A stretch of 64,000 nt of DNA from Lepidodermella squamata (taxonomy: Eukaryota > Animalia > Gastrotricha), in NCBI GenBank assembly GCA_047495785.1, contig JBLDXI010000034.1, forward strand, positions 806,001-870,000, read 5' to 3'. Below are positions 2,468 through 61,088 of the stretch, piece by piece. A program made the translations under genes and the position numbers. The notes under the pieces were generated by a model. That model worked only from the letters and a program-made list of their open reading frames with translations, searched no databases and had not been told where the DNA came from. The number at the start of each line of letters is the position of its first letter. Positions within the stretch are counted from its first letter, which is position 1.

Positions 2468-5400
2468 ATGATTCAAGTTTACGGATTACTTTTGCTCACG
2501 ATACGCCCGACGCTGATTCACGCGGGCGGAGGTTAGTTTTCTGTTCACATTTGACGCATCCAGATAAATATTATGGTAAAAAAATATTGTTCAGGTTTGC
2601 CACTATCGAAATTGCCACTATCCACAACATCCACGAGTTCTCCAGACTCAACAGGCCCTTTTGCAACTCCACTGGGCTACAACGCAACTCTGATCGATGA
2701 CCGTTCCGTGCCCGGTGGAAAGGTTTCAACGACGCTATTTCAAGCATCCGTAGGCGTACTTGTAGACATGCCATCTGTTGTTTTGTCCGGTACTGGAATA
2801 GCTTCTAAAAATGCAAGTGATATTAGCTCGTTTCACACATTTAATGCTTTCTGTTTCATTTCGCTCTAGAGCCTCAACAGCTTGGGCGAAAATTTCCTAA
2901 TCGAGACTAAATTCACATTTGCAAGTTGGATGACATTCCAACAGGCGGACACTTTTGCGATTTCAATCATTCCAAGATACGCCTTTTCCGTGTCACCATC
3001 ATGTATTCCTACTAGTAGCGATTGGTTTGCATGCCTCCGAATTTCCAATATAACCGGCCTGGCAGTCTACGTGAAACCTGCCCTCAATTTCATGTATATA
3101 TTCGCAAATTCGAAGCCAGACATCAGTAAACCGAACACTTTGGCTGCCTGGGACGACAAGCTATTAGGCTGTAATTTCCCCGCAGGAACGCTTTCCAATT
3201 CAATCTATGTATACCTGCGAAGAATTGGCGATGCTTTCTCTATATCTTACGCCGTCGATCCAAACCCGAGCTCAGCTACTAACTGCACGTCATTCAGCAG
3301 TGCCGCAGCGTTTCCGTCTGATGAACAACTCTACTTGGTTGCTTCGGCTTCAGAGCTTTTGCCAGTCACGTTGAACGATCTGCGTGTTTACAAATTGGAT
3401 GAATCTATGCAGACAAGTGAGCACTTTTACATAGGATTTGCTCTGTAATTTTTCAATATCCTGTTTGAAAGCTACGACCGCTTCGACTACTTCAACAACG
3501 GGTAACCAAGTTTGCTTTTACGCGCTGATATTTAATAAAAAAATGTCCAAATATATTTCAGCTGGAGGCGCGAGCTGCGTGCCTGGATCAATACTTCAAG
3601 GTAGATTTAAATTTTGAAGATAACTGTGAATGAAATGAAAATATTTAGAAAGGAGGATGAGAAAATAATAAAGCTTGGTGAAAAATCCCAAGCACCTTGA
3701 GAAATGAAGCCTAAGAGGAATCTAGAGGTCGAGGTGACTGTGGTGGCTTGAAGATTTTCCAGGCTAGGAGTTTCTCCTGAATTTCTACTTCTATATTCTA
3801 AGTTAAGCATTTTCTCGGTAAGTTTTGCCAAAACCATTGGACCATACTTTAATATTCATCTAATATTTAATATACTTTAATTGGCATCTAAATCATTTTT
3901 TTCTGCATCTAATATCTTTTTTCCACATCTAAATATTTTTTTCGCATCTAGGCATTTTTTCTACAGCTAATTCTACTTTTTCTCACATCTAATTTAAAAA
4001 TAGCTCGAATGACTTCAAAAAAATTGAAATATGATTCAGCGCGTTTTTCTCGATAAGAAAACATATGTTTCGTTGCCAGATCAGGCGCGCGGAAAAAGGC
4101 ACGTGGGAAAATGTTAATAGAACGCAAATGAACGATTGCACACGGGTTCCGTCTTTCAAAACCTGCTCACTGGCCGCCGGTCGCAGCAGAGGATTGTCAG
4201 ATTTGAATCTAGCGATTGCTTCCTCCCACGTCGAATCAGTTACTCGGAGCTTCTCGAAGTATCTAATGTTTTTACCCCTAGTGGGCTTTTCTCCAACAAC
4301 GGTATCATCCGATGACGATACTACCGTTGAAGGAGACGAAAAAATGAGTTGTTTCATGATTTGAGCAAATGAGCAAATGGGCCGATTCAATTTTCAACAA
4401 CTGATGTGGAGCTGGAAAATTCGCGTTATTTACTACGCCTTTCGCACGTCCATTCCTCTATTAACATTTTCCCACGTGCCTTTTTCCGCGCGCCTGATCT
4501 GGCAACGAAACATATGTTTTCTTATCGAGAAAAACGCGCTGAATCAGATTTCAATTTTTTTGAAGTCATTCCAGCTATTTTTAAATTAGATGTGAGAAAA
4601 AGTAGAATTAGCTGTAGAAAAAATGCCTAGATGCGAAAAAAATATTTAGATGTGGAAAAAAGATATTAGATGCAGAAAAAAATGATTTAGATGCCAATTA
4701 AAGTATATTTATTGCCATTGATTGAGCTTGGCATTTTTTAGCTCCAATAAATTAGGATTAAACATTGTGTATCTAAATTTCAATGAGGGCGTCGCTGAAA
4801 AGGATGTTGCCTGAACCATATTTCTTTTACCAGCTCCCATAATAGTGATGCAACAAGATCCGAGCAGTTATCAATGCAGCGAGCACTATGCATTCCCCGG
4901 AGTGGACTTCGCCCCGGCGTATGGCAATTTGGAGACTATTGGAAGCTCCGTTTTAATGGGCCAGAACAATGACCAAGGCTTAGTTTTCAATGAGGTGAGT
5001 TGTCGCAAAGTGAACTTGATTGCAAGCAAGGGTTCCTTCCGAATCTCAAGGATGTTAAGTGGATTGGCTCGACAGGTTTTGCTCTTGACATATCACTAAA
5101 TGTCGCTGACACTACAGGCCGCAATTCGTTCGGCATTTTCATCGCGCCAAATACAAACTTCATCTACGATTGCCCGATGACACGAGATTCGACAGCGAAC
5201 ATGTGTTTCAAGATTGGGCAAACACTCGGCCTGGCATTTATCGTTCACGTGGGCAAGAACACTATCTACCATTACGCGGCTATGGATTCACCACTGGCCA
5301 TAAATACCATTGCACCGACTACGGGTATGGGGTGCGAGCCAGTATTCCCTTCTGGCTCATTTGATATGAGAATCGTCATCGAAAAAATAGGAAAAACGTT

Positions 5401-8400
5401 TTTCATCCATTATTCTTTATCGAGCAGCCTGAGTGACTTGAAGGCTTGCAGTAGCATTGAGGCTGCAAATCTGACATCTGGCAAACTAGCGGATACTCGA
5501 ATAGGGATTACAACGCTCAAGCTGACAGTTTTGAAGATCAAAAGCATCGAGTTTTATACGGCGGACATTCCCTCAACATCAACGACTACTACTACAACAA
5601 CGTCTTCACTGCCGCAATCGACGACTCCTATTTCTACGTCAACAAGTATTGCAACATCAGCCTCCACGCTATCGACATCTTCAACAGGTGAGCATAATAG
5701 GAATAAGACATATTAAGGGCATATAGGATTTAATTGAGGTTAAAATAAAAGCTGAAACGGTAAGCTAAGATTTTCCATGAATTTCAGCGAACCCCGCGAT
5801 GATGCCGTGTTCGCCTGGAGCTGCTTTTCAAGGTAAAATTCACTCGCGAATCACTCCCTTCCTCCCTTGAAGCTTATAGTTTGATGTGATTTAGCTCCTA
5901 ACAGTGTTCTACAACGAGATCCTAAGACTTACCTGTGTCGCAGCGAATTCGCTCATCCCGGAGAAAATTTCCGCGCGACCGGAGATGGCGTCGAAAATGT
6001 CCCTGGCCCAACGAGCTTTGGAACTAACGATGACAACGCCATTCTCTCTAGCAAGGTAATTTTACAGAAATCCAGGGTTTTAAGTTTAATTTCTCGTTAC
6101 AGTCAATCAAATTCGTGAATACGAGTGGATTCATAGTGGATGTGTCATTAACAATCAAAGCCAGTGCTGATCGGGATGCGTTTGGTGTCTTTATCACACC
6201 TCGTAGTCGAATCTCGGAAATTATTTGTCCAGGCAACGACCGAAGCGTCATAAGTATGTGCCTGAACACTGGCGCATTTCGGGGTTTCGCGGTTTTCGTT
6301 CTCCTTAAAGCGGGCAAAATTTATACAGCCTCTTCGACTGACAAGGACAATGCAATCAATCCTACAGTGGATATTCCCACGGATGAAAGCCGGAAATGTG
6401 ATCTCGCGGTTCCAGTACCATCTACCCAATTCGATTTTCGTTTGGTGATTGAAAGAGCTAGCGAAACAGCCTTTATCTACTATTCGACATCGAGCGACCC
6501 AAATTCTCTGAATTCCTGTTGTAAACAAAACGTTGAAGGGCTGACTGTGAGAAGTGAAGATCCAGTCATTGCTATCGGGACCATGGCAAAGACTGCCTTG
6601 ACAGTTGAAGGCGTTGAATTTTACATGGCTGAAGATTCTACAGCCAGTACATCTTTGAGCACAACGCCCCAACGTCTATCAACATCGGCATCGAATTCTA
6701 TCTCAGTAGCCCTTACTCCCACTTCGGAAGTCCCGGAAATCGCCTTATCAGAGCAGTATAACTTCAAAAATGACATGTCTTACATCGGAGTTGAAGGTAA
6801 GCCGTTAGTGTTAATAACTCAAGCTTCGATTTGATTGATTTCAGGTAAAAATTATTACCTGCTAAGAAGTCCTGTCGCGAACCATCCTACCGGCTTTGCT
6901 CAGTTCGGAGTTGATCCTAGCTACGATGGAGTTATGATGTCGAAATTTGTTAAATTTCTTTTGCTCTACTTCACTTTCTTCATTCAAATCTTGATCTAGG
7001 TTCTCGATGATATGAACATCATCAATTGGCGGTTAGAGGCTTCGTTCTATATCGACAGGCCTGGGCAGCTGTTTTCGATATTCGTAGCCCCTAGATCATC
7101 CATGCCCGATGTAGTTGAGAACTGCGATGTTACAGGAAATCAAGTCATGTGTTTGAACATGAGAGCATTGCGTGGTTTCGTAATCTACATCAAGCCAACC
7201 CAAGGCATCATCTACCCGTTCGTCTCCGAGCGAAACGCAACTGATGCTCCGTTGCAGGTGCTTCCTTACGACGACCCTCGGTATCTGGGGAAGAGCTGCA
7301 ACGTAACAATTATCGGAAACCAAACGATTGACATAGTGGTCGAAGCTTTCGATAATGTGGCGGCGGTTTACGTTAAATCTCCTACGTACAGCCTATGCTT
7401 CACTACGGAGATAAGCCCGAATCTCATGAAAATGGGCGATGTTCGACTTGGCGTTGGGGTCAGGTCTGGGACGCGTTTCGATCTAACAAAGCTTGCGTTT
7501 TTCAATATTACAAGTTATGATCCGGAATTATCCGGGGAACTCAGTATTGCAGAAATTGTGTCTCTAATAGTTTCACATGGAATTACTGATAGATCGACCA
7601 AGGATTTTCTCCAGTATCTCTATCCTGACTTCCCGCATGATACATCAAAGCCTGGTATAACCGCCGAAGAGTTGCTAAGTTATTGCGACGATTTCTCGGT
7701 TGAGCGAATGGCTCCTCCTAACAATGGCAATTCCACCCCGGTCACCACCGTATTCCTGATCGATAAAATCGTTAAGATGGATGATGCTAATGAGAGATTC
7801 ACGATCAGTGGTCTATATTTACAGAACTGGGTGGTTTCAACTTGTAACCTACAATCGAAACATATCTTCTCGGTCAGAAAAATTGATCGTTTATTCGCTG
7901 TTGATAAATCCATCGTCTGGTATCCTGAGTTCTTATTCTTATCGAGCAGTGATGATATCTACATGAAAGGCGATAGCTTTGATGATGATATGGTGGCGCT
8001 TCTGAAGAGGAAAGGCGCAACTGGTTTGGATATCTTGTTTTTCCAGCTGAAACAAGGCTTCTTCTCGACTGAATGCCCGCTTGATATCTCGAAATTTCCC
8101 TTTGATTCTCAAACTTGCGAGTTCACTTTTTCACAGCAACAATCGACTGATCTTGTGAAATTTGGCGACGTTTTCTTTATTTGCCCAGGACAAGGCTCGA
8201 CGGAGTGGAGAATCTCGGAATGCCAGGCTACGTGGACAACCATTCGCCAATCTGGCCATGATGTTGTAACAGCGACGTTTCAAGCCAAAATTAGTAGGAA
8301 ATCTGCGTACTACGTGGCGAATTCTATCGGACCGAGTTTGCTATTGGCTCTACTGGAACTAGCAACCTTTGTCATGCCTTCGAATCAACCCGATCGACCT

Positions 8401-8694
8401 ATGTTTTCAGTCACTTTGTTGCTAGCTCTGACTGTTGCAATGTCGAATGTCCTGAGCCAAGTTCCTCATTCTTCGAAGCGAGTATTTCTGGGTGATTACG
8501 TTCTATGTCTTACGATGATTGCTGCCGCTATCACGATATATCATCTCTTCGCTTGTTTCCTGGCAAATACAGGCGATAAAAAGGAGCGAAAAGCCAGTGG
8601 ACTGATGAGGAAACTTGATTATTTTGCAATTGTATTGGCTATGGCAGCATTTGCCGGTCTTCAAATATACGCATACAAAACAATACTTGGCTGA
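2468..8694 (+). CDS. Signal peptide + 4 L-type-lectin-like domains + Cys-loop ligand-gated ion channel (~1464 aa, 12 exons)
   Basis: Exons 2468-2531, 2595-2812, 2870-3416, 3472-3501, 3562-3600, 4834-4994, 5051-5687, 5788-5832, 5895-6055, 6103-6796, 6845-6948, 7000-8694 join in frame. N-terminus MIQVYGLLLLTIRPTLIHAG. Channel motifs WYPEF, CPLDISKFPFDSQTC, EW, M1 YYVANSIGPSLLL, M2 DRPMFSVTLLLALTVAM. Confidence 0.85.
3840..4714. mobile_element. Non-autonomous foldback/MITE-like element in intron 5
   Basis: ~250-bp inverted arms (~3869-4120 and ~4458-4710) with ~21-bp modular subrepeats (ttttt..catcta), flanked by CCATTG at 3834-3839 and 4715-4720. Absent at the homologous site of the second copy (~38875). 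Confidence 0.8.
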
Positions 8695-9320
8695 AGTTGG
8701 TATACATTTTTTCATCTAAAACAGCTATCAAATTTAGGAAACCTCTTGTCTCCAGTCTCTGGATCCTTTCGTGTTTTGAAAATAAGTATATTCTTCTCAA
8801 GTGATGAAATTCTACTACATTAAAAATGCACAATATTCAGCAATGTACACCTCTGCTTCTTATATAAAATTTTGCTGCTATTAATTGGTAGAATTGTTTC
8901 TGGAACTATTCATCACCAGTAAATTTTCAACCTAATGTCTCTTTTGCTTCATCATATAAATTTTCGTCAGTCTTCATTTTGCTGCTAAGGACCGGTGACT
9001 GGTCTGTTAGGGATGATTACTAACATGCCTAGTGGTACTTCGCTCTCAGTTTTGCTGGTTATGCTAAATAGTTCTTATTCAACGGCTAAAAAACCGACAT
9101 TGGCGGTAGACAATATTCAACAAAAAATTATTAATAAGCTTGATCAAACAATCCTATACATTATTTGTTTACGCGATGCTTCCATGAGCTTTCAATTTAT
9201 TAGGATTGGAAAAAAATATTTTGCAGATTTTTAGCTGCGGAAATTAAGATTGAGCAGATCTAGGTAGAGATTGTTTTAGATCCAACAACATTTAATTCGC
9301 TAAGCCTATCGTTAAATGAA

Positions 9321-12300
9321 ATGTTTCGCCTCTCTCTAATTTGTTCATGCCTCTGTTGGCTGACTTCAGCTGCTCAGGGTATGGTTTTATTCGGGATTTT
9401 CTATTTGCTGTAATTCCCTTCTTGATCATTCAACAGTACCTCGCGTCCCAGTGAATGGCTTTAAGGCGACTCTCATCAGCGATTATTCACTAGAGAGTGC
9501 CAGCCCACCTAAGATCTCAACATCGTTGTGCAATGTTTCTGCAAATTGCGCTGCCGGCAAGTCATACATAGCGTACCCAAACTCAACAGACGGTGGCTTC
9601 ATTTTCAAAAAGGCAAGACTACATAATACAGAATGGAAGATTTTAGTGTCATCCCTTTCCATCGCAGAGTCTCAAATCTGTGTTTCAAAATTTTCACATT
9701 GAGGTGAAATTCTCAACTGTAGACGTTTTTTTCGATGAATCGAATGCTTTTGCTGTTGCCTTGGTGCCATCTCAGAAGTTTTCAACCAACTGCCCGGGTA
9801 ACAGTGGCTGGTATGCCTGTATTGGGATTGTTGATTTTCGCGGTGGGGCAATTTTTGTAAAACCAAGACTTAACATGGTCCTGATGTACGGTAAGGCCAC
9901 GAGCAGTTCAATTTTGCCTGGACCTGCAACATCTCTCGGTGGCGGAACGTACGGTTGCCCGTTACAGAATTTCTTCTATGGCTTGCAAGTGAATTGGCTG
10001 TATATCGACAAAATCGGGAATAATCTATCAGTTTCGTACGCGAATAAAACAGATTCTCCCAAGTACTGCTCGTCGATGGTAGCCGACCTCACCTTCCCAG
10101 CCACGGAAGACATTTACTTGGCCTTTTCAGCAACTAAAGGCTTACCCGTCTTCATAGGGCAAATCGATTTCTACTCCCTGGAAGATTTGTCAACATCAAG
10201 TAAGCAGTTTTTGTTATGCGAACTTTTTTAATATCCTTAAACAAAGCTGCCACCCCGGCTGGCAAGCAAACAACTATAGGTTTGTGAATTTTGTTGGCTC
10301 AACTAAAAATGATGTTCGATCTATTTAAACACAGCTGACTACGCTTTAACCACCTGCTTGGATGGAGATAACCCAAGAGGTGAAATCAAATTTTACTAGG
10401 TCGATTTTGCTAATGAACTCGGGAGATGATTGTTAAACAGGGCCCAGTGGTGGTTTCCAGCTTGATCCAACCAGATATGCGTGTAATAGCAAGTACGGCT
10501 ATCCGCCATGGACTCAATACTCGGCTGCTAACCAAGTTGATGCGGATTTGCTTGTCGAAAATGGTTTGAATGTGTTTGGCAGCAGCGATGACAATGTTCT
10601 CTACTCAAAATATGTATGAAAGTCAACATTTTAGATTAATTTCTATATTAGAATTACGGACAAAATCATTTGATATCGCCTTTCATCACAAGAAGAGACG
10701 AAAGACGTTGAAAAGAGACTGAAGTTGTTGTGTAATGCCCTGAACTCTTGTTATTAAACAGTCATTTGACGAGAGAGATTTTCTCATCGACGTATCGCTG
10801 CAAACGCTGGAGCAAACATCTCGTGATGCCTTTGGTGTTTTCATCGCTCCGGCGGATCGTTTTGTAACAACCAACTGCCCGTCGAACGAATGCGACGCCG
10901 AGTGCATGTGTGTAAAAGCACCGGAAATGATCGGCCTATCCGTTATCGTGCAACTAAAAACTGGACGGATCGCTATTTTCTCAACCCCACCTAACGTTCA
11001 GAAATCGTTCACTCCTTCATCAAGCGTGCCTACGGATCCGTCGCAATTCTGCACCCGAACCTTCGGAGCTGCAGCCTTTGATTTTCGCATTGTAATCGAA
11101 CGAGTTGCGGACATGGTTTACGTGTACTACTCAACGTTGAACGATCCAACCCAGCTCACCTTCTGCGGGAATGCTAGTATCCCAGGGCTGATAACAGCAA
11201 GGTTGGCACCGATCTTGGGCGTTGGCACAATGCGGAACACTATCGTGAAATTAAAGAGCATCAAGGTTTTCTCCGGTCAAGACGATTCAACCTCAACGAG
11301 TTCTACTCCAGCCATGACAACGAGCCAGCTTACAACTTCAACGACTGAATCTTTAGCACCATGGGCTACATCCGCCCCGATTTCATCTGCGAAAACACGA
11401 TCTACAACGAATCCATATCAGACGCTTCAATCGACAACAGTTGAAAATGGATTATCTGACGATTTGAGTATTAAGGAAGTGATTGCTAAGTATGTCTCTT
11501 CAAAAGGGCTGACGGAAAATCCTAGAGACGTTGCTCGAAGGCTTTACCCTGATTTCCCACCTGATACTTCTCTGGCGTCAATAACTGCTTGGGAACTACT
11601 CCAGTATTGCGACGACTTCTCGGTTAATAGAACCGCTCCACCTAACTATGGTCAGTCAACCAACGTTACGACTGTTTTCCTTATTGATCGTCTGGCTGGT
11701 ATGGATAATGCTGGCGAGAGTCTAAGTGTAACGGGGCTGTTTTTACAAAACTGGAATGTTACTACGTGCCGTCTTCAGTCGAAGCACATTTTCTCAGTAA
11801 GGAAGAAGGACAAATTGTACGCGGTTGATAAATCAATCGTTTGGTGGCCTGATTTCACTTTCGAGTCTAGTTCTAACGATATCAACATGGAAAGTGATGA
11901 GTTCGATGAAGACATGGTTGCTTCACTGACGAGAGTTGGCTACAGCGGCTTGAAAATCGGGTTCTTCATGGTGAAACAAGGCTTCTTTTCGACTGAATGC
12001 CCTCTAGACATCTCGAGGTTCCCATTCGATTCTGAAACGTGTGATTTCGTGTTTGTGCAAAAACAGCCCAATGGCCTGATAGGTTTCGATGATGTTTTCT
12101 TCGTTTGCCCTGAGCAGGACTTCACGGAATGGGAATTCTCTGAATGTCAGACTACAACATCAATCGTTCGCCAATCAGGTCATGATGTTCTATCGGCGAC
12201 TTTCCAGGCTAAAATCAGCCGGAAGTCTGCGTACTACGTGGCGAATTCTATTTGCCCAAGTTTGCTTCTGGCCCTACTGGAACTTGCGACTTTTGCCATG

Positions 12301-12618
12301 CCTTCGGATGAGCCTGATCGGCCGATGTTTGCTGTAACGTTATTGTTGGCTCTGACAGTTGCTATGTCTGATGTCCTGAGCCAGGTTCCCCACACCTCGA
12401 GGCGAATTTTCTTGAGCGATTACATTCTTGGACTGGCTATGATTTCGGCTGCCATCACGTTATACCACCTTTTCGCTTGTTTCCTAGCCAACAAAAGAGG
12501 CAAGGAGGAGCAGGAAGACACTGGGCTGATGAGAAAAATCGACTTGGTTGCTGTTGCCTTGGCTATAGCTGTGTTCGCTGGTCTACAGGGCTTTACTTTG
12601 AAAACAATTTTCGGCTAG
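9321..12618 (+). CDS. Signal peptide + 2 lectin-like domains + Ser/Thr linker + Cys-loop channel (~957 aa, 7 exons)
   Basis: Exons 9321-9378, 9437-9612, 9668-10199, 10247-10279, 10335-10379, 10441-10613, 10762-12618 join in frame. Signal MFRLSLICSCLCWLTSAAQG; WWPDF; CPLDISRFPFDSETC; four hydrophobic helices. Confidence 0.85.
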
Positions 12619-17419: not shown

Positions 17420-18475
17420 ATGCAGTATTTATATGTGGCATTTCTCGCTCTTACTTACGGACAGAAAGTCCACGCCTCCAGTAGTTTATTAAAACGACAT
17501 ATTACAGGTTAATCGTTAATCATACTGTTATTTTCAGCTCCATCTCCGCTGATTCCGGTATCAGGCTATGCGGCAAGTTACATCAGTGATTTGTCCCTGG
17601 CAGGCACTTTCACTGAATCTCTATGCAATATTTCAGCGAACTGTCTACCCACAGCCTCGATCGCACCTGTGGTAGATGACGGGGGTTTCATCTTCAAGAA
17701 AGTAAGACCTTGATGTAGGCTATAGCTAGATGATATGCATTTCTCACTTCGAAGAGCGTCAATTCCGTATTCGAAAATTTCCGCCTTGAAGTGAACGCGC
17801 TTATTGCTGGAATGGCTTTCACGGTGGACCATACTCTCGCAGTTTCCATGGTTCCATCTGAAGTATTTTCAACTGGCTGCACACGGGATAGTAACTGGTA
17901 CGCCTGCCTTCGCGTCAGCAAGCTTCGAGGCGGAGCTTTCTACATTAAACCAAGTCAGAAAATCGCGTTTTTATACGGCGATGTTAGAGATCTAAGCAGC
18001 GATGCTCGAACCCGTGACAAACTGGACCCGACCAACCTTGGTTGTTCATTCCCTTCTGATGATTTCGCAAACGCTGGCTTCATTGGCTCGAATTCTCTGT
18101 GGATCTACATCAATAAGATTGGCAGCAACTTTTCTGTCTCGTACGCGAAAGGTTCGACTCCTGCCAGCCCAGTTTATTGCTCGTCAATGAATGCCAGCTT
18201 TGCTTTCCCGCTCAATGAAGACCTGTTCCTAGCATTTTCAACTACAAAAGGCCTTCCGATGGCGTTTTATCAGGTGAATTTCTTTAAGCTGGAACTGGAA
18301 TCTGCGTCAAGTAAGCCTGGACAAATTTTTCGTCCTAATTTCTACTCAGTTTTTAATTTCCTGTGTTGAAGCTTCTACTTCGACTATAATTCCGACAACA
18401 ACAGGTCTGAATTGTCACGGCATTTAATAATTATTAAAATATCGGATTTCTACCGGCAGGTTTCGCATCAAAGAG
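17420..18475 (+). pseudogene. 5' fragment (signal peptide + first lectin-like domain) of the channel gene at 51809-55281, truncated at the duplication junction
   Basis: Matches 51809-52864. Exons 17420-17480 (MQYLYVAFLALTYGQKVHAS), 17538-17701, 17755-18310, 18372-18404, then breaks inside micro-exon 5 at ...catcaaagag|acgatg. Confidence 0.85.
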
Positions 18476-21434: not shown

Positions 21435-21457
21435 CTTTTTCAAATTCAAAGTGAAGA

Positions 21458-46400: not shown

Positions 46401-46779
46401 GGCGAATTCTATTTGCCCAAGTTTGCTACTGGCCCTCCTGGAGCTTGCGACTTTTGTCATGCCTTCGGATGAGCCTGATCGGCCGATGTTTGCTGTAACG
46501 TTGCTGCTAGCTCTTACAGTTGCTATGTCTGATGTCTTGAGCCAGGTCCCGCATACTTCGAAGCGAATTTTCTTGAGCGATTACATTCTTGGACTGGCCA
46601 TGATTTCGGCTGCCATCACGTTGTACCACCTTTTCGCTTGTTTCCTAGCAAACAAAAGAGGCAAGGAGGAGCAGGAAGACACTGGGCTGATGAGGAAAAT
46701 CGACTTGGTTGCTGTTGCTTTAGCTATAGCTGTGTTCGCTGGTCTCCAGGGCTTTGCTTTAAAAACAATTTTCGGCTAG
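43482..46779 (+). CDS. Second copy of the 2-lectin-like-domain Cys-loop channel at 9321-12618
   Basis: Offset +34161 from copy 1. Matches through the lectin-like domains and diverges from ~46010 onward (CPLEISRFPFDSQTC). Confidence 0.85.
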
Positions 46780-49959: not shown

Positions 49960-50174
49960 TTTCCTGGACTTTTCATCACGAATTTGCTGATTGAACTCCT
50001 TCACGCGAGCCATTGCGTGTCTTCAACCTTGTTTCACTCGAATTATCAATAAATTTTAATATTTATGGATCACTGTGTTCGTTAAATAATTCCAGTGAAA
50101 ATAGTTAGCTTCTAGCTTAACATAATGTTTTCAAGTCCTGGAAATGACCCGAAAGTGACAAAGCGTGTCTCCTT

Positions 50175-51808: not shown

Positions 51809-54800
51809 ATGCAGTATTTATATGTGGCATTTCTCGCTCTTACTTACGGACAGAAAGTCCACGCCTCCAGTAGTTTATTAAAACGACATATTACAGGTTA
51901 ATCGTTAATCATACTGTTATTTTCAGCTCCATCTCCGCTGATTCCGGTATCAGGCTATGCGGCAAGTTACATCAGTGATTTGTCCCTGGCAGGCACTTTC
52001 ACTGAATCTCTATGCAATATTTCAGCGAACTGTCTACCCACAGCCTCGATCGCACCTGTGGTAGATGACGGGGGTTTCATCTTCAAGAAAGTAAGACCTT
52101 GATGTAGGCTATAGCTAGATGATATGCATTTCTCACTTCGAAGAGCGTCAATTCCGTATTCGAAAATTTCCGCCTTGAAGTGAACGCGCTTATTGCTGGA
52201 ATGGCTTTCACGGTGGACCATACTCTCGCAGTTTCCATGGTTCCATCTGAAGTATTTTCAACTGGCTGCACACGGGATAGTAACTGGTACGCCTGCCTTC
52301 GCGTCAGCAAGCTTCGAGGCGGAGCTTTCTACATTAAACCAAGTCAGAAAATCGCGTTTTTATACGGCGATGTTAGAGATCTAAGCAGCGATGCTCGAAC
52401 CCGTGACAAACTGGACCCGACCAACCTTGGTTGTTCATTCCCTTCTGATGATTTCGCAAACGCTGGCTTCATTGGCTCGAATTCTCTGTGGATCTACATC
52501 AATAAGATTGGCAGCAACTTTTCTGTCTCGTACGCGAAAGGTTCGACTCCTGCCAGCCCAGTTTATTGCTCGTCAATGAATGCCAGCTTTGCTTTCCCGC
52601 TCAATGAAGACCTGTTCCTAGCATTTTCAACTACAAAAGGCCTTCCGATGGCGTTTTATCAGGTGAATTTCTTTAAGCTGGAACTGGAATCTGCGTCAAG
52701 TAAGCCTGGACAAATTTTTCGTCCTAATTTCTACTCAGTTTTTAATTTCCTGTGTTGAAGCTTCTACTTCGACTATAATTCCGACAACAACAGGTCTGAA
52801 TTGTCACGGCATTTAATAATTATTAAAATATCGGATTTCTACCGGCAGGTTTCGCATCAAAGAGCTGCGTTGTCGGCGACCATCCTGTCGGTTAGATTAA
52901 ATTTCTTTGCGATAAACAGCTCGATACACACTCTGATGCTTTCCAGGCCCTAGCGGAACGTCGGTGTTTAAAATTGATGCTAGCAGCTATGCGTGCAAAA
53001 CAGAGTACGGCTACCCGTCCGATCGATATGTCGTCATCGGAGAAGTGTCTCATTCTAGCGACGGCGTAGCAATTTTTGGAGTTCTTGGGGACAATGCCAT
53101 TTATTCTCGATTGGTAATTGATAGTACTAATAAGTATGAACCCTACCACATGCCCATGCCAGGCTTCACCCTACCCTAAACCCATTTCTAACCAAAACAT
53201 CAACCTCAGTACTAAGGCCTTAATCCTAAACCTAAACCTAACCCTACGTCTAACATCAGCCTTAACCTTAATCCATACAACCTTCGAACAGCATTCAAAC
53301 CTAACCCCAACCCTACACCATTAGGGAATCTAGCTAAACTTTAACCTTGAACCCTAATCCTAGGCGCGAACCTAAATCTGATTATAATCTAACCTTAACT
53401 GTATCTCGAACATAACCTAGTTGACGGTCGCAATTCGGAACGTTACAACTTAAATTGGCGCTAAGAGTTCAAACCCTCTTGCGTTGTTTTGTTTTGATTG
53501 CTACTGTATTACAGGATTTGATAGCTCAGCAAAGTTTCATCGCCGATGTTTCCATTCGAGCAAGGGAAGGTTCATTTCGCAACGCATTCGGCGTCTACTT
53601 CGTACCCAGTAATCTATTGATTCAACCTCCCTGCTCAGGAGACCGTTCAACCTACCACATGTGCCTGAAAACTGCTGACATGATCGGTGTAGCTGTGGTA
53701 GTTCAGGTTTCGAAAGGGCGAATAGTTGCTTTTTCAACACCACCCGGCATGGCGCAACGCCTAGACGCTATAGGTTACCTTCCACCAAATTCTACTCAAA
53801 TGTGCCAACCAACGGCTTTCCCATCATTATTCGACCTCCGCCTAGTGATCGAGCGAGTCGAAGATACAGTTTACGTATATTATTCAATGTTGAATGACCC
53901 GTCTAAGCTGGATTTCTGCTGCAAAATAAATGGGATCTCAAGGCTGCTGTCTGACACAATTAGACCGGTAATCGCAGTTGGAACAGTGAATGAAACTCCA
54001 TTGGAAATTCGGAGCATCAAATTCTACGTCGGCAGTGACGCTACAACATCGACTACAACTGAGTCATCGTCAGTAAGATCTCAAACAGATCCCACTTCAT
54101 CGATTGCGAATCTTGGCGATGAAAGTCAAACTATGAAACAGGTGCTTTCGTCTATGGTTTCGCCGAACGGATTGGCTGAGCGTCCTACAGATGTTCTGAG
54201 AAAGCTGTATCCTGATTTTCCCCCTGACACATCGAAACCAACGCTCACTGCTTGGGAACTACTCCAGTATTGCGACGACTTCTCGGTAAATAGAACCGCC
54301 CCACCTAACAACGGACAGTCAACCAATGTTACGACTGTTTTCCTGATAGATCGCCTCGCAGGGATGGATGATGCGGGGGAGAAATTGTCAGTAGTTGGTC
54401 TTTATTTACAAAACTGGATAGTAAACACTTGCAAACTGCAGCAGAAACACATTTTCTCAGTAAGGAAGAAGGACCAATTGTATGCGGTTCATAAATCGAT
54501 TGTTTGGTCGCCTGATTTTCTATTCGAATCCAGCTCACATAATATATACATGAAAAGTGACGATTTCGACGAGGACATGGTTGCTCTACTGAAGAGAATT
54601 GGTTACAGTGGATTGAATATCGAGTTTTTCATGGTGAAGCAAGGTTTCTTTGCAACCGAATGCCCCCTTGACCTGTCGAGATTTCCATTTGACTCTCAGG
54701 CTTGTGATTTCACGTTTTTCCAGCAACAATCCGGGGACCTTGTGAATTACGAAGATGTTTTCTTTGTTTGCCCTGAACAAGGCTTCACTGAATGGCAATT

Positions 54801-55281
54801 CTCAGAATGTCAAACTGTTACGTCAATCGTTCGCCAATCAGGTCATGATGTTCTATCGGCGACTTTCCAGGCTAAAATCAGCCGGAAGTCTGCGTACTAC
54901 GTGGCGAATTCTATTTGCCCAAGTTTGCTACTGGCCCTTTTGGAGCTTGCAACTTTTGTCATGCCTTCGGATGAGCCTGATAGGCCGATGTTTGCTGTAA
55001 CGTTGCTGTTGGCTCTGACAGTTGCTATGTCTGATGTCTTGAGCCAGGTTCCCCACACCTCGAAGCGAATTTTCTTGAGTGATTACATTCTAGGGCTGGC
55101 TATGATTTCGGCTGCCATCACGTTGTACCACCTTTTCGCTTGTTTCCTAGCCAACAAAAGAGGCAAGGAGGAACAGGAAAACTCTGGGCTAATGAGAAAA
55201 ATCGACTTGGTTGCATTGGGTCTCGTAATGACAGCTTTTCTTGGACTTCAAGCGTTCGCAGTTAAATCCATCATTGGTTAG
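51809..55281 (+). CDS. Signal peptide + 2 lectin-like domains + Cys-loop channel (~929 aa, 7 exons)
   Basis: Exons 51809-51869, 51927-52090, 52144-52699, 52761-52793, 52849-52890, 52947-53113, 53515-55281 join in frame. WSPDF, CPLDLSRFPFDSQAC, M1-M4. Confidence 0.85.
53168..53420 (-). repeat. Degenerate telomere-like (CCCTAA)n tract in intron 6
   Basis: Runs of ccctaa/cctaaa/ccttaa hexamer variants. Confidence 0.7.
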
Positions 55282-55793: not shown

Positions 55794-58073
55794 ATGCTGC
55801 CTATTTATCTGAATTTTCTCCTTCTCGCTTTCTCACGAGAACTTCTGGCTGGTTTGTTTATTCTAAGTGGAGATTTCGATGATTATTATCAGAAAATTTC
55901 AGATACTCGTGTTGCAGTGCCAGGCTATTCGGCGACTTATATCCCCGATTTGTCACAATCAGGCACAATATCCCCTGATCTATGCAATGCTTCTACGAAT
56001 TGCGATTCGATGGGCTCAATTCAGGCGGCTAGTAAAGACGGAGGCTTCATCTTCAAGAAGGTATGAAGTTAGAAATTTTCTACTTTTGGTTTAACTGATG
56101 TCTTTAGAGTATAAATTCTGCGTTCTCAAATTTCCATCTTGAAGTTAACGGACTCTTCACGCAAACGGATTTCAATCTCTCACATACTTTCGCGGTTTCA
56201 TTGGTACCTTCTGAGGTATTTTCGACCAGTTGCCCCGAAACCAGTGGCTGGCATGCCTGCCTAAGGGTTAGCGCTCTTCGCGGTGGTGTTTTCTTCATCA
56301 AACCCAGTCAAAACATTTCATTTCTATTCGGAGATGTTACTGATCATGAAAGTAAAGCTAGCTCGATCGAAAAGTTGGAAGCAAACAGCTTGGGCTGCTC
56401 ATTCCCTGCTTACGAATTCGCAAATGACGTTTCCCTGAGTGGTGACCTATTTTGGATCTTTTTCGATAAAATCGGCAACAACTTCTCGGTTTCTTACGCC
56501 CGGGAATCGGATTCAGATAACATAATTCCGTGCTCTTCGATGAAAGTCGATTTAGCTTTTCCGCTCAATGAAGAGTTGTTTCTTGGTGTCTCTACCTCAA
56601 AAGGACTCCCCGTTAATATTTGGCAGGTTAATTTCTTCTCGCTGGAACCAGACTCGACATCAAGTAAGCTTAAAAAAATGATAAACAAATTTTAATTTCC
56701 CGCGACGTAGCTTCTACTTCAACTTCAACGCCAACAACCACAGGTTGGGATTTTGTTCTAATTTTGTTGATTAGAAAACGAATTCTCGAATTTGTTTAGC
56801 AGTTGAAGTATCGTCAACTGACCTTGGGCAATCTTCAACTAAACAAACAGCTACCTCGATATCCTCAATTTCAAACGTTACCTCAACGCCAACCTCAGGA
56901 ATATTGCCATTGGACGGCTCAAGTTTCAAAGGGGTAATTTCCGCCTCGGTTTCGTCGAAAGGACTAGCTAAGAATCCGAAAGAGGTACTTCGGAAGCTTT
57001 ATCCTGATTTCCCGCCTGATACATCGATTCCTGCGATCACTGCCAATGAGTTACTCCAGTATTGCGATGATTTCTCCGTTGAAAGAGCTGCTCCTCCGAA
57101 TGGAGGAAACTCAACTGAAGTCAACACAGTTTTCCTTATTGATCGTCTTGCTGGAATGGATAATGCTGGGGAGAGTCTGAGGATCAGTGGTCTCTATTTA
57201 CAGAACTGGATTGTGAATACCTGCAAACTGCAGCAGAAACACATCTTCTCAGTAAGGAAAAAGGATCGATTGTACGCGGTGGACAAATCAATTGTTTGGT
57301 GGCCTGATTTTCTTTTCGAATCTAGCTCGCGCGATATTTACATGCAAAGTGATGATTTCGACGAGGACATGGTAGCTTCACTGACGAGAGTTGGTTACAG
57401 CGGCTTGAAAATCGAGTTTTTCATAGTGAAGCAAGGCTTCTTTTTAACTGAATGCCCTCTCGATCTATCGAGATTTCCATTCGATTCTCAGATTTGTGAT
57501 TTTACCTTTTCGCAGAAACACCAAACTGGTCTTGTCGATTTTGGGGATGTTTTCTTTGTTTGTCCAGAGCACGGATCTACGGAATGGGAATTAACTGAAT
57601 GTCAGACCTCTGTATCAGTCATTCGCAAATCTGGCCACGATGTTTTGTCCGCTGCGTTCCGGGCGAAGATTAGTCGAAAGTCTGCGTACTACGTGGCGAA
57701 TTCTATCTGCCCAAGTTTGCTTCTGGCCCTACTGGAACTTGCGACTTTCGTCATGCCTTCGAGTGAACCTGATCGGCCAATGTTTGCTGTCACTTTGTTG
57801 CTTGCTCTGACTGTTGCCATGTCGAATGTCCTGAGTGAAGTTCCTCGAACTTCTCAGCGAATTTTCCTAAGCGATTACACTCTGGGTCTTACTATGATTT
57901 CGGCCGTCATTACGCTCTACCATCTTTTCGCTTGCTTTTTAGCCAACAAAGGTGCTAAAAAAGAGCGGGACGCTTGTGGCCTCATGAGGAAAATCGATTT
58001 GGTTGCATTCTCGCTGTCATTTGCATCGTTTGTTGGACTTCAAGGCTTTGCAGCTAAAACTGCCATGGGTTAG
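55794..58073 (+). CDS. Signal peptide + 1 lectin-like domain + Ser/Thr linker + Cys-loop channel (~691 aa, 5 exons)
   Basis: Exons 55794-55851, 55903-56060, 56108-56663, 56711-56743, 56803-58073 join in frame. WWPDF, CPLDLSRFPFDSQIC, M1-M4. Confidence 0.85.
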
Positions 58074-58655: not shown

Positions 58656-61088
58656 ATGCTGCATTTTCACCTGATATTACTAGCTCTATGGTACTTGAAC
58701 GAAGCCTATGCTGGTTGGTTTTTTTTCACTACCCACTTCGAGAATAATATGTAAATCTCTTTGCTTGTACTTTAAGATCAATCTCCGATCGCTTCAGTCC
58801 CCGGCTACTCAGCCACGTATGACGCCGATTTGTCTGCAATAGGCGCAATTCCTGACCAGTTTTGTAATTACTCCGCAAATTGTTTCGACAATGGGGTTAT
58901 CATGCCTGAAACTGAAGACGGAGGCTTCATCTTCAAGAAGGTAGATAATTTCACTTTACTGGCTATTTTTGGCTCATTTTTCTCACAGAGCATCAACTCC
59001 TCGTTCGAAAATTTCCACATCGAAGTCAACGCTCTCTTTGGCGTGAATAGTTTCGAACTACCCAACACATTTGCGATTTCTTTGGTACCAGCCGAAGTAT
59101 TTTCCATAAGCTGTCCCAGTGAGTGGCATGCTTGTCTACGGGTTGGCGCACTTCGGGGAGCGGTTTTCTTCATCAAACCAAGTCAGAAAATTGCGTTTCT
59201 ATACGGCGATGTTAAGGATCACAGCAATGATGTTAAAGACCGAACCCAGCTGGACACATCTAGCCTCGGTTGTTCATTTCCAACTGACGACTATGCTAAT
59301 TCCGATTTTTATGCACCCGATGTCAAATCCTTCTGGATTAGCATCAACAAGCTAGGCAACAATTTTTCTGTGTCTTACTTCCCAGAATCAGATGTGAACG
59401 CTGTGACGTACTGTTCATCGATGCAGGCGAACCTGGCTTTGCCGTCTGCTGAGGAATTGTTCTTAGCCTTCTCGAGTACGCAAAATTTGTCGGTGATGTA
59501 TCGGCAGATAGGTTTCTACACGTTGGAATTGGAAACTACCTCAAGTAAGCCAACTCAATATATGAACAACGAAAATATCGCTTAATTTCCGTTTTGGAAG
59601 CTTCCACATCAACACCGGTGCAAACAACCACAGGTTTGGATCACCACGCATCATCATTGCAAACAAAATGTTAAATTTTCAACAGTCGATTTCGCGGCGA
59701 AGAGCTGCGCAGTTGGAGACCAGCCTATAGGTTAGCTTCAACTCGGTAATAATTTTCAAATCGATACACTGCAAATTTGATCTAGGCCCGAGTAGATCTT
59801 TTCAAATCGATCGCAGCAGCTACTCTTGCAACATTGACTTCGGCTATCCGTATCCGCAATATTTCTTCGCTGGGAATCCTTATTTGAACAACGGAGTAAA
59901 CACAATGGGCTACAACGAGGACAACGCTTTATACTCGAGAACGGTATGCTTCATGAAATTATTTCAACGCTACTCAATAATGAATGATGAATAGCGTGTA
60001 AATGTTAACATACCATTGAGCTCGGTGTGCGACGTGCATGGGGATGTCTATCTTAGGGGGAGCCACAAGCCACATCTTATCACTCAGCACAACAGGTTCA
60101 GGCAAGAAATCCTGACAAAAACCATAGAGGAATCCCAAGGTTCAAAAAGGGACCAAAAAGGTTCCAAAAAGGGTTCCCTAGGTCCTTTGGGAATCCCAAG
60201 GTCCAAGGATTTATGGCTAGTTTAGTACCCCTCACGTATTTGGCACTTAGGGTTAGGGTTAGGAATCTAAGCCAAGAGTTAGGTTCAGCGTTAGGGTTAG
60301 CAATCTAAGCAGTGGGTTAGGTTCAGGGTTAGGTTTGGGGATTTGGTTGGGATTAGCGTTTGGTTTAACTAAAGGTTGAGGTTAAGATCCTATTTACTTT
60401 TAGGGTTAAGGTTAGGGTTAAGGTTCGGTTTCGAGTTCGGGTTCGGCTTTGGCTTAGATATAGGCAAGTGACAGGGTAATTCGTAAAATGATGCAGCTTT
60501 TAACGCATGAAAAGGTTTCCCAAGTCAGAAGACTGAAGAGTGAAACCGACATTAAAATTCTTCGCTGCTTTTATTTGAAAGGATTTGAGGATTGACGAGA
60601 AAGGGTTCATCGTTGATGTATCGCTGCGTGTCCTCGCCAATGCAAATCGCAATGCATTCGGTTTCTTCTTAGCACCATCCGACACATTGACAACAAGTAC
60701 TTGCACAATGGATTGCCCAACGCACTGCATGTGCCTGACCACATTGAATATCCTTGGTCTTGCTGTGGTCGTACAGGTATCGTCAGGCCGGATCGTCGCT
60801 TTCGCAACACAAGCAACTAGGAGGCAAAGTTTCGATCCCGTGAATTACGTGCCAACAAACCCGTCCGAGAAATGCACCCAGAGTTTTTCCGCGGCGGATT
60901 TTGAAATGCGTTTAGTCATCGAGCGTATCGGGGATACAGCGTATCTCTCGTATTTCGTATTCGACCTCTACTGATCCGAACCAGCTGACGCCTTGCCTCA
61001 GTATAACCGGCTTCTCGGAATTTCTAACTAGTACAATCATATCTGAGCGGAAGGTTATAATTGGAACACTGAAAAACACCCCCGTGGT
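58656..61088 (+). pseudogene. Lectin-like/channel family paralog with 2 lectin-like domains, frameshifted and truncated before the channel
   Basis: Exons 58656-58713 (MLHFHLILLALWYLNEAYAG), 58777-58940, 58989-59544, 59601-59633, 59686-59730, 59786-59943, 60582 onward. A 7-bp duplication TCGTATT at 60948-60961 shifts the frame; homology (..IGTLKNTPV) ends at the MITE at 61089. Confidence 0.8.
60247..60460 (+). repeat. Degenerate telomere-like (TTAGGG)n tract in intron 6
   Basis: ttagggttagggttagg, gttagg, ttcggg hexamer variants, preceded by a ccaaaaagg-type low-complexity tract at ~60130-60210. Confidence 0.7.

What the first reader, a model, noticed from the sequence alone, without database searches (positions are those of the whole stretch)
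2468..61088. Expanded family of Cys-loop ion channels fused to tandem L-type-lectin-like domains (candidate lectin-tethered ionotropic sensors)
Seen: the short ORFs upstream of each channel ORF are exons of the same gene. Spliced, they give a signal peptide, 1-4 homologous ~220-aa domains with Ser/Thr-rich spacers, and a full pLGIC module. The domain pattern (NWRVEASLNI..DxFxxFxxP..GxAVxV..C..F..F.L.IER.G....IYYS.....L..C......xxIGxxT......xSIKFY) parallels the ERGIC-53/VIP36 L-type lectin jelly-roll, including the two-Cys spacing near its end. Established: metazoan Cys-loop receptors normally begin right after the signal peptide. N-terminal accessory domains are known mainly from prokaryotic pLGICs (e.g. 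DeCLIC, two jelly-roll NTDs) and Cys-less invertebrate pLGICs, whereas these keep the Cys-loop. Inference: a pentamer would display 5-20 variable binding modules on mucin-like stalks above a cation pore, making a contact chemosensory or microbe/glycan pattern-recognition channel. I do not know of a description of this architecture.
Basis: partly seen in the sequence, partly recalled or inferred. Interest (0 to 1): 0.95.

Follow-up and report, generated by a model that had tools for sequence, protein, structure and literature searches.

The report
Cys-loop channels with lectin-fold heads
This invertebrate genome carries a tandem cluster of at least eight apparently intact genes for neurotransmitter-receptor-type ion channel subunits, each with one to four extra outer domains shaped like sugar-binding (L-type lectin) proteins; a comparable design has been reported only in the lobster genome, with other domain types, and its function is untested.

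Summary
The + strand carries eight apparently intact pLGIC genes: B, C, D, E, B', C', F and G. It also carries two damaged copies (A, H) and one 5' fragment. Canonical short-intron splicing gives uninterrupted proteins of 692-1500 aa. Each has a signal peptide, 1, 2 or 4 homologous domains of about 230 aa, Ser/Thr-rich linkers and a full Cys-loop channel.

The last domain lies in the same exon as the channel in B-F, so that fusion needs no splicing. The head exons are under purifying selection (dN/dS 0.14-0.37).

An AlphaFold model of the first domain matches ERGIC-53/VIP36/Emp47 best (Z 15-17, against 10-12 for generic ConA-like folds). By sequence the domain has no Pfam, PDB or public relative, and sugar binding is not shown.

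The novelty claim is too strong. The lobster genome paper (PMC8221624) already describes Cys-loop receptors fused to C-type lectin, pentaxin and LDLa domains. I rate this a new variant: another fold, tandem arrays, another animal group.

No RNA data were available, so the gene models are predictions. The scan has noted similar channel fusions on other pieces of this genome.

The parts
1..1768 (+). Gene A, cut by the window start: T3 main exon plus channel. It is a copy of the 3' part of gene E with a 98-nt deletion that shifts the frame before M1. Likely a pseudogene or an assembly error.
2468..8694 (+). Gene B: 12 exons, 1444 aa. Order: signal peptide, T1, T2, T2, T3, channel. Cys-loop at 8074-8118; M2 at 8389-8466.
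9321..12618 (+). Gene C: 6 exons, 936 aa. Order: signal peptide, T1, T2, Ser/Thr linker, channel. T2 main part, linker and channel lie in one exon (10762-12618). One GC-AG intron.
17420..18310 (+). Orphan 5' fragment (signal peptide plus T1 exons), 100% identical to the 5' end of gene F. It ends near the edge of the segmental duplication (18475).
24500..30036 (+). Gene D: 12 exons, 1500 aa. Order: signal peptide, T1, T2, T2, T3, channel.
31452..36841 (+). Gene E, the reference model: 12 exons, 1463 aa. Signal peptide 31452-31500; T1 31555-32346; Ser/Thr mini-exon 32401-32430; T2a 32480-33410; T2b 33824-34917; T3 N-piece 34971-35068; T3 main plus channel 35120-36841. Cys-loop at 36221-36265; M2 at 36536-36613.
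37531..42855 (+). Gene B', the duplicate of B: 12 exons, 1454 aa, four domains.
43482..46779 (+). Gene C', the duplicate of C: 6 exons, 936 aa, two domains.
51809..55281 (+). Gene F: 7 exons, 929 aa. Order: signal peptide, T1, T2, Ser/Thr linker, channel. T2 main part, linker and channel lie in one exon (53515-55281).
55794..58073 (+). Gene G: 5 exons, 692 aa. Order: signal peptide, T1, Ser/Thr linker, channel (a single head domain).
58656..61090 (+). Gene H remnant: signal peptide, T1 and T2 exons, with a frameshift near 60955 inside the T2 main exon. No channel module follows before the ankyrin gene. Likely a pseudogene.

Best explanation
What it is. This is a lineage-specific, tandemly expanded family of Cys-loop (pentameric ligand-gated) channel subunits. 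The mature N-terminus of each subunit is extended by 1-4 disulfide-bonded domains with an L-type-lectin-like (ConA-type jelly-roll) fold.

Layout. T1 and T2 sit on Ser/Thr-rich, presumably O-glycosylated linkers. T3 is joined without such a linker to a conserved helical segment in front of the channel ectodomain. A pentamer would therefore display 5-20 heads above the pore.

How the variation arose. Every head cassette begins and ends in intron phase 1. Cassettes can therefore be duplicated or lost without breaking the frame, which explains the 1-, 2- and 4-domain genes.

How it most likely works (inferred). The fast-evolving heads are extracellular recognition or capture modules for macromolecular ligands, which may or may not be glycans. 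The proximal T3 and the pre-helix segment pass occupancy on to an ectodomain that has lost the classical aromatic transmitter site. The pore has Asp at -1' and Leu at 9' and probably conducts cations.

What is shown and what is not. Shown: the gene structure, the fusion, homology among the heads, the fold of T1, purifying selection, and the channel hallmarks. Inferred: expression, pentamer formation, the ligand, gating by the heads, and ion selectivity. My confidence is about 0.85 for the anatomy and about 0.35-0.4 for the mode of action.
For: - Fusion without splicing: T3 or T2 and the channel share one open exon in B, C, D, E and F.
- Eight spliced models have no internal stops and use consensus splice sites.
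- Between D and E, the length differences of all 12 exons are multiples of 3, while intron differences are not. Exon identity is 84% against 75% for introns.
- dN/dS is 0.14-0.37 for the heads and 0.09-0.12 for the channel. Between B' and E the heads are 44-56% identical and the channel 87%.
- hhalign links T1, T2 and T3. Four Cys are conserved.
- T1 model: pTM 0.76, with pLDDT 80-95 over most of the main exon. Best matches are ERGIC-53 (Z 16.7, rmsd 3.3 A over 196 aa), Emp47p 15.5 and VIP36 15.2, against 10-12 for GH16 and galectins. Foldseek gives E 1e-8. The top ESM Atlas match is the ERGIC-53 cluster, PF03388.
- T2 by language-model features: the named nearest clusters are mostly ConA-like families.
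- Channel: Pfam; alignment to nAChR alpha3/alpha6 with -1' Asp, 0' Arg and 9' Leu, and a 4-residue gap where loop B has GSWS. The AF2 model has a beta-sandwich plus four helices and matches alpha7, GABA-A, GlyR, GluCl and GLIC at E about 1e-16.
- Logan contigs of run X1 cover 28 of 30 bins of the stretch laid over gene E, with no indels. The first ~370 bases, including exons 1-2, have no laid contig.
Against: - There is no transcript evidence: no RNA run holds the stretch.
- The heads have no detectable sequence relative. A HMMER profile found 0 hits in 1.84 billion proteins, there was no PDB sequence hit, and the only Pfam trace is a sub-threshold Lectin_legB match (E 0.016) in one copy.
- No conserved Asp, Asn or His that could form the canonical Ca2+/sugar site was seen.
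- T2 and T3 were not modelled well. The T3 part of the second model has pLDDT below 40.
- Flexible mucin-like linkers are poor transmitters of conformational change, so T1 and T2 may not gate anything.
- The nearest channel relatives, in metagenome contigs, have only a signal peptide or a Ser/Thr stalk and no head domain. The channel can therefore presumably work without heads.
- A few junctions in C/C' have weak splice scores.
Confidence: 0.6

Rival explanations
1. The fusion is real, but the heads do not sense anything for the channel. They anchor or cluster it in cuticle, glycocalyx or matrix, or help folding, assembly and traffic, as the L-type lectins ERGIC-53 and VIP36 do for cargo. The pore would be gated by a small ligand, ions or pH at the ectodomain.
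For: - Long Ser/Thr linkers separate T1/T2 from the channel.
- Related channels in metagenome contigs carry only a stalk or nothing.
- The channel module is far more conserved than the heads.
- The closest folds are intracellular cargo receptors.
Against: - The classical aromatic ligand site is degraded: the loop B Trp is deleted and loop C has no YxCC.
- T3 is joined directly to the ectodomain without a linker.
- The heads diversify quickly yet remain under purifying selection, as recognition modules do.
Confidence: 0.27
2. The upstream exons belong to separate genes for secreted lectin-like proteins, or the long models are artefacts of chaining. Only the last exon would make the channel protein.
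For: - There are no RNA data.
- After several head exons the frame runs into a stop within a few codons of the donor site, so intron-retaining short products are conceivable.
- Some junctions are weak.
Against: - The channel exons have no start codon with a signal peptide of their own. They begin in the middle of a head domain (B-F) or of a linker (G).
- The T2 and T3 exons have no start codon or signal peptide either.
- All junctions keep the frame in eight genes, and intron positions and phases are conserved between paralogues.
- Exon length differences between D and E are all multiples of 3.
Confidence: 0.07
3. The array is largely decaying or inflated by assembly: silent young duplicates, or haplotypes laid in tandem.
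For: - A, H and the 17.4-kb fragment are broken.
- B/B' and C/C' lie in an 18.5-kb duplicate with stretches of 100% identity.
Against: - Eight long ORFs of 692-1500 aa are intact.
- dN/dS is well below 1 even between old paralogues with dS above 0.5.
- Identity along the duplicate is a mosaic of 88-100% and includes an 878-nt insertion. That fits a real duplication with gene conversion better than a collapsed haplotype.
Confidence: 0.06

Closest known systems
Chimeric lectin/pentaxin/LDLa Cys-loop receptors of the American lobster (Polinski et al. 2021, Sci Adv, PMC8221624)
   Same: Both are metazoan Cys-loop subunits (PF02931 + PF02932) of unknown ligand, strongly expanded, with extra extracellular recognition-type domains. 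Both are proposed to couple pattern recognition to ionotropic signalling. Pentaxin is also a ConA-like jelly-roll (from memory).
   Different: The lobster domains are C-type lectin, pentaxin and LDLa, recognisable by Pfam or SMART. Here the domains have no Pfam family, have an L-type-lectin-like fold, come in tandem arrays of up to four, and carry mucin-like linkers. The animal appears to be a different group; another agent of this scan suggests a rotifer, which I did not test. The lobster authors state that they did not find such receptors in lophotrochozoans, cnidarians or vertebrates. Whether the channel parts are orthologous was not tested.
Arthropod proteins with Methyltransf_FA (PF12248) + Neur_chan_LBD in the ESM Atlas
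   Same: They have an N-terminal accessory domain in front of a Cys-loop ligand-binding domain, are 565-646 aa long, and are the nearest clusters by language-model features to the T2+channel exon of gene F (score 0.88).
   Different: The accessory family is different, there is one domain only, and the hosts are arthropods. I found no paper describing them. The match is a lead only.
DeCLIC and other prokaryotic pLGICs with N-terminal domains
   Same: An accessory N-terminal module sits on top of the ectodomain and modulates gating in DeCLIC (PMC9897478; 10.1101/2025.02.27.640520). T3 is likewise joined to the ectodomain without a flexible linker.
   Different: DeCLIC is bacterial, has a Pro-loop without the cysteines, and has two lobes and no mucin linkers. 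The genes here are eukaryotic, with introns, signal peptides and a Cys-loop. The packing of T3 on the ectodomain could not be modelled.
L-type lectins ERGIC-53/LMAN1, VIP36, Emp46/47 and legume lectins
   Same: They are the best structural matches of the T1 model in three libraries. The domain size is similar. One copy has a faint Lectin_legB match in the right part of the profile.
   Different: There is no significant sequence similarity. The Ca2+/sugar-binding residues are not recognisable. Four conserved cysteines are present. The context is the cell surface, fused to a channel, rather than an ER-Golgi cargo receptor.
Related single-exon channels on ENA metagenome contigs (P0002 41% identical; P0003 32%)
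   Same: They share the channel subfamily: the conserved pre-helix segment, the Cys-loop, the PDR motif before M2, a very short M3-M4 loop, and tandem arrays.
   Different: They carry only a signal peptide (L001) or a signal peptide plus a Ser/Thr stalk of about 110 aa (L002/L003). The head HMMs find no head domain.

Membership tests
Pentameric ligand-gated (Cys-loop) ion channel superfamily | Ligand-binding-domain profile (Pfam PF02931) above the gathering score | tested here: met
   36.7-45.4 bits against a cut-off of 26 in the four genes scanned
Pentameric ligand-gated (Cys-loop) ion channel superfamily | Cys-loop: two Cys 13 residues apart, with the FPFD motif | tested here: met
   C-P-L-D-I-S-K-F-P-F-D-S-Q-T-C is invariant in all seven aligned modules
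Pentameric ligand-gated (Cys-loop) ion channel superfamily | Four transmembrane helices with a pore-lining M2 (9' Leu) | tested here: met
   PF02932 scores 24.8-29.9 bits against a cut-off of 28.1, so only F passes. The HMM alignment to nAChR alpha3/alpha6 covers M1-M3 with 9' Leu. The AF2 model has helices at 431-454, 461-483, 488-520 and 529-559. Foldseek E is about 1e-16 to many pLGIC structures.
Pentameric ligand-gated (Cys-loop) ion channel superfamily | Pentamer that conducts ions on ligand binding | not testable with these tools
   Needs expression and electrophysiology
Nicotinic/5-HT3-type (aromatic-box) receptors | Loop B Trp and loop C aromatic residues / vicinal Cys | tested here: not met
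   There is a four-residue gap exactly where alpha3 has GSWS. Loop C reads S-G-H-D, with no YxCC.
L-type lectins (PF03388 Lectin_leg-like / PF00139 Lectin_legB) | Jelly-roll fold of the ERGIC-53/VIP36/legume-lectin type | tested here: met
   Tested for T1 only: Z 16.7/16.7/15.5/15.2 to ERGIC-53, p58, Emp47p and VIP36 against 10-12 for other ConA-like folds; Foldseek E 1e-8; ESM Atlas TM 0.63 to the ERGIC-53 cluster. T2 and T3 are linked to T1 by hhalign only.
L-type lectins (PF03388 Lectin_leg-like / PF00139 Lectin_legB) | Significant match to the family profile | tested here: not met
   No Pfam hit reaches threshold in the 19 copies scanned. The best is Lectin_legB at E 0.016, 15.2 bits against a cut-off of 26.3, in one copy. 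There were no PDB sequence hits.
L-type lectins (PF03388 Lectin_leg-like / PF00139 Lectin_legB) | Conserved Ca2+- and sugar-binding Asp/Asn/His residues; carbohydrate binding | tested here: inconclusive
   Across the 19 copies only Pro, Gly and four Cys are (nearly) invariant, and no acidic or Asn column is conserved. A residue-level structural superposition on ERGIC-53 could not be obtained. Binding itself needs experiments.
Crustacean chimeric immune-domain Cys-loop receptors (PMC8221624) | PF02931/PF02932 channel plus an extra extracellular recognition domain in one protein | tested here: met
   the paper's description was read
Crustacean chimeric immune-domain Cys-loop receptors (PMC8221624) | Accessory domains of C-type lectin, pentaxin or LDLa type | tested here: not met
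   Pfam scans of all head copies found none of these
Crustacean chimeric immune-domain Cys-loop receptors (PMC8221624) | Common descent of the channel part | not tested
DeCLIC-type pLGICs with an NTD | Prokaryotic Pro-loop channel with a two-lobed NTD packed on the ECD | tested here: not met
   The genes here are eukaryotic, with introns and a Cys-loop. The packing of T3 is not resolved.

The most novel reading that the evidence does not exclude
Binding of a macromolecular ligand (glycan, microbial surface or conspecific cue) to the lectin-fold heads directly opens or tunes the Cys-loop pore. That would make these proteins one-molecule ionotropic pattern-recognition or contact-chemosensory receptors. 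The design would have arisen independently here and in crustaceans, with exon-cassette shuffling supplying a rapidly diversifying repertoire of heads.
Probability: 0.2. Interest if true: 0.85.

Novelty: new variant of a known kind. Interest (0 to 1): 0.62.

Why it matters
Structural work on pLGICs still states that N-terminal accessory domains belong to prokaryotic members (10.1101/2025.02.27.640520). The one broad evolutionary survey I read deliberately cut off the terminal regions (PMC4795631).

The lobster genome gave a first metazoan exception. This locus gives a second one in another animal group. The head fold is different, and the modular logic is clear: phase 1-1 cassettes, mucin-like linkers, and a proximal head fused directly to the ectodomain.

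If the heads gate or tune the pore, the genes offer a compact test case. The channel part is a single exon with a very short intracellular loop. It could show how extracellular recognition domains are coupled to a Cys-loop pore, and whether animals use such channels for chemosensation or microbe sensing.

If the heads only anchor the channel, the family is still a notable lineage-specific expansion of orphan receptors.

Tried and rejected
- RNA support. The look-up of sequencing runs found one DNA-type run and no RNA. Read laying therefore showed only contig support and an in-frame 87-nt linker variant.
- Relatives of the head domain. A HMMER profile against 1.84 billion representatives gave 0 hits. 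Profiles against PDB sequences gave 0 hits. Pfam at E up to 10 gave only noise plus one faint Lectin_legB match.
- Word-indexed protein searches. The whole F exon gave only a weak 5-HT3A hit. The channel region of a long query gave nothing. Only the profile of seven channel modules found relatives.
- Metagenome DNA scans with two channel alignments found nothing. One alignment was too divergent to use.
- Modelling T3 together with the channel. The channel part was acceptable and the T3 part unusable, so T3-ectodomain packing stays open.
- Mapping the ERGIC-53 sugar/Ca2+ residues. No tool returned residue-level superpositions or lectin sequences, so I left this out rather than type sequences from memory.
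- Rfam on the window gave no hits.
- A bacterial or prokaryote-like origin, suggested by the single-exon channel and short M3-M4 loop, was rejected. The genes have spliceosomal introns, signal peptides, a Cys-loop and eukaryotic neighbours (HDAC, ANF-receptor GPCR, ankyrin).

Full report
WHAT IS IN THE WINDOW

The window is eukaryotic DNA of about 43% GC. All channel-related features lie on the + strand. tblastn with one channel module and two head domains finds nine channel modules and more than 25 head-domain pieces.

Pfam recognises Neur_chan_LBD in the long ORFs (E 1e-9 to 1e-12, 36.7-45.4 bits against a cut-off of 26). It finds Neur_chan_memb close to its cut-off. The translation shows a textbook Cys-loop (C-x13-C with FPFD), four hydrophobic helices and an M3-M4 loop of only about 15 residues.

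The parts in front of the channel modules have no Pfam match.

THE FUSION AND THE GENE MODELS

In B, D and E a head domain (T3) runs straight into the channel within one open exon. In C and F a T2 domain, a Ser/Thr linker and the channel share one exon. That part of the fusion needs no splicing.

For the rest I read the DNA of gene E. I then chained its exons through consensus GT-AG sites. The result is 12 exons, with nine introns of 49-60 nt plus two of 104 and 413 nt, and a 1463-aa ORF with no internal stop.

Projecting these exons onto D gave the same 12-exon structure and a 1500-aa ORF. A small junction solver recovered known junctions in a test. It then gave intact models for the other genes:
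- B', 1454 aa
- C and C', 936 aa each, with one GC-AG intron
- F, 929 aa
- G, 692 aa

HMM scans of the assembled proteins give these architectures:
- SP-T1-channel for G
- SP-T1-T2-channel for C and F
- SP-T1-T2-T2-T3-channel for B, D and E

The linkers reach 40-54% Ser+Thr. Each protein has 6-14 N-glycosylation sequons.

Each domain is coded by a small exon for the N-terminal piece plus a main exon of about 180 codons. T2 is preceded by a mini-exon carrying a Cys. Every cassette starts and ends in phase 1. This is the classical arrangement for exon shuffling and explains the variable domain number.

EVIDENCE THAT THE HEAD EXONS ARE CODING

Between D and E, the length differences of all 12 exons are multiples of three (0, 3, 12, 33, 6, 87 and so on). 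Intron differences are not. Exon identity is 84% against 75% for introns.

Nei-Gojobori dN/dS is 0.14-0.37 for the heads and 0.09-0.12 for the channel module. Between B' and E the heads are 44-56% identical and the channels 87%. Conserved channels thus carry fast-evolving heads.

Logan contigs of the only run that holds the stretch cover 28 of the 30 bins laid over gene E without indels. No contig was laid on the first ~370 bases, which include exons 1-2. One contig skips 87 nt, in frame, inside a Ser/Thr linker.

No RNA run was found. All gene models therefore remain predictions.

DAMAGED COPIES AND THE DUPLICATION

Positions 1-18475 and 34974-52864 form a tandem segmental duplicate with mosaic identity of 88-100%.
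- A is a copy of the end of E with a 98-nt deletion.
- The 17.4-18.3 kb piece is a 100% identical copy of the 5' end of F.
- H has a frameshift in its T2 exon and no channel.

There are therefore six distinct intact gene types, two of which are present twice.

WHAT THE HEADS ARE

T1, T2 and T3 are homologous by profile-profile comparison (97% probability, E 4e-11 and 5e-12). They share four conserved Cys, one Pro and one Gly.

By sequence they are orphans:
- 0 hits for their profile among 1.84 billion representative proteins
- 0 hits against PDB sequences
- in Pfam, only one sub-threshold Lectin_legB match (E 0.016) in the C-terminal third of one T1 copy

I modelled T1 of gene E with AlphaFold2. 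The input included one in-frame 54-nt intron, because spliced sequences could not be submitted by reference. The model has pTM 0.76, and pLDDT 80-95 over most of the main exon.

Three structure searches agree:
- Foldseek against the PDB puts the ERGIC-53 and VIP36 carbohydrate-recognition domains first (E 1e-8).
- The exhaustive VIA search gives ERGIC-53 Z 16.7 (rmsd 3.3 A over 196 residues), Emp47p 15.5, VIP36 15.2, an Entamoeba legume-lectin-like domain 15.1 and peanut lectin 12.4. GH16 enzymes, galectins and other ConA-like folds follow at 10-12.
- The ESM Atlas search puts an ERGIC-53 cluster (PF03388) first (TM 0.63).

Language-model features place both T1 and T2 among mostly ConA-like families.

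Lectin activity is not supported. No acidic or Asn column is conserved across the copies. The metal-binding stretch that legume lectins carry after the central strand (from memory) is not recognisable. I could not obtain a residue-level superposition.

THE CHANNEL

The profile of seven modules aligns to nAChR alpha3 and alpha6 from the Cys-loop through M3 (E 2e-13). M2 reads P-D-R at -2' to 0', has Leu at 9' and Val at 13'. This suggests cation selectivity, but the -2' Pro is the anion-channel type, so selectivity is an inference.

Where alpha3 has GSWS in loop B, these proteins have a four-residue gap. Loop C has no aromatic or vicinal-Cys motif. This agrees with the scan's separate note on the ectodomain.

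The second AlphaFold model (T3 plus channel of gene B) gives a beta-sandwich and four helices at pLDDT 70-85. It matches alpha7, GABA-A, GlyR, GluCl, 5-HT3 and GLIC about equally (E about 1e-16). Its T3 part is unusable.

A conserved segment of about 35 residues with two short helices precedes the usual alpha1 helix. It is present also in genes without T3 and in the foreign relatives.

RELATIVES ELSEWHERE

The only close relatives found are on ENA metagenome contigs:
- P0002, 41% identical, is a signal peptide plus channel.
- P0003 and its neighbours, about 30% identical, are a signal peptide plus a Ser/Thr stalk of about 110 residues plus channel.

These also lie in tandem arrays, and the head HMMs find nothing there. 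The named proteins that come next are Mytilus nAChR-like subunits at about 26% identity. Two scans of JGI metagenomes found nothing.

Another agent of this scan considers the genome most likely a rotifer's. I did not test that.

COMPARISON WITH WHAT IS KNOWN

Recent DeCLIC work says that prokaryotic pLGICs can carry an N-terminal domain, while eukaryotic ones add an intracellular domain. Jaiteh et al. discarded the terminal parts in their survey and called for architecture studies.

The ESM Atlas search with the T2+channel exon of F returned arthropod clusters combining Methyltransf_FA with Neur_chan_LBD. That led me to the American lobster genome paper. It reports 116 Cys-loop proteins, 66 of them of unknown function. 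The authors describe that class as carrying C-type lectin, pentaxin or LDLa domains. Some of them are highly expressed in brain and antennules. [quoted passage not shown]

No other paper with this combination turned up.

The general idea is therefore published at genome level. This contradicts the earlier notes of this scan that such add-ons are described only for bacteria.

What is new here:
- a different head, Pfam-less and of L-type-lectin fold
- tandem arrays of up to four heads on mucin-like linkers
- a proximal head fused directly to the ectodomain
- a phase 1-1 cassette structure
- occurrence outside arthropods

MECHANISM AND VERDICT

The anatomy is well supported; I give it about 0.85.

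The most likely mode of action is that the heads are diversifying extracellular recognition or capture modules. T3 and the pre-helix segment would then couple occupancy to an ectodomain that no longer has a classical transmitter site. This is inference, at about 0.35-0.4.

The main rival is that the heads only anchor, cluster or help traffic a channel that is gated in some other way (0.27). Separate genes (0.07) and a decaying or mis-assembled array (0.06) are unlikely.

I rate the finding a new variant of a known kind, with interest 0.62.

Noticed in passing
window 1-18475 and 34974-52864: An 18.5-kb tandem segmental duplication with mosaic identity (88%, 90-92%, 98% and a 2.4-kb stretch at 100%). 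It carries genes A/E (3' part), B/B', C/C', a PPPDE-peptidase-like ORF, an HDAC gene, an NmrA-like gene and the 5' end of F. The pattern suggests gene conversion.
   Followed up: partly
window 3839-4717: An 878-nt insertion in an intron of gene B, absent from B'. It holds a 133-aa ORF on the minus strand (3989-4390) with no Pfam match. It may be a mobile-element remnant.
   Followed up: no
window 18400-21000: A GC-rich block (55% against 43% around it) just past the end of the first duplicate copy. Its ORFs have no Pfam match. Its origin is unknown.
   Followed up: no
window 21455-24047 (+): A gene with two ANF_receptor exons followed by a 534-aa exon with several hydrophobic helices. It looks like a divergent class-C-GPCR-like receptor, yet it has no 7tm_3 Pfam hit.
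   Followed up: partly
window 13276-13875 (-), 14466-15698 (+), 16092-16879 (-); copies at 47453-48061, 48684-49956, 50175-51268: Housekeeping-type genes sit between the channel genes: a weak PPPDE peptidase match, a histone-deacetylase-domain gene in several exons, and an NmrA-like gene.
   Followed up: partly
window 43774-43828 and 9613-9667: A GC-AG intron of 55 nt (AAG|GCAAGA) in C' and C, at the position where F has a GT-AG intron.
   Followed up: yes
window 34708-34796: One Logan contig of run X1 skips 87 nt, in frame, inside the Ser/Thr linker of gene E. Several alternative contigs differ by clustered substitutions. These may be allelic or paralogous variants.
   Followed up: no
window 61870-63162 (-): A 430-aa ankyrin-repeat ORF (12 repeats), with a long mirror ORF on the opposite strand that is probably an artefact of the repeats.
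   Followed up: no
L002:8229-12765 and L001:2768-5453: Metagenome contigs carry tandem arrays of related single-exon Cys-loop channels with Ser/Thr-rich N-terminal stalks, next to kinase genes and a faint Sushi match. The source organism is unknown.
   Followed up: partly
window 36990-37030 and 60230-60480: Microsatellite-like repeats that read as (GL)n or (RV)n in translation, in the intergenic region before B' and in the long intron of H.
   Followed up: no
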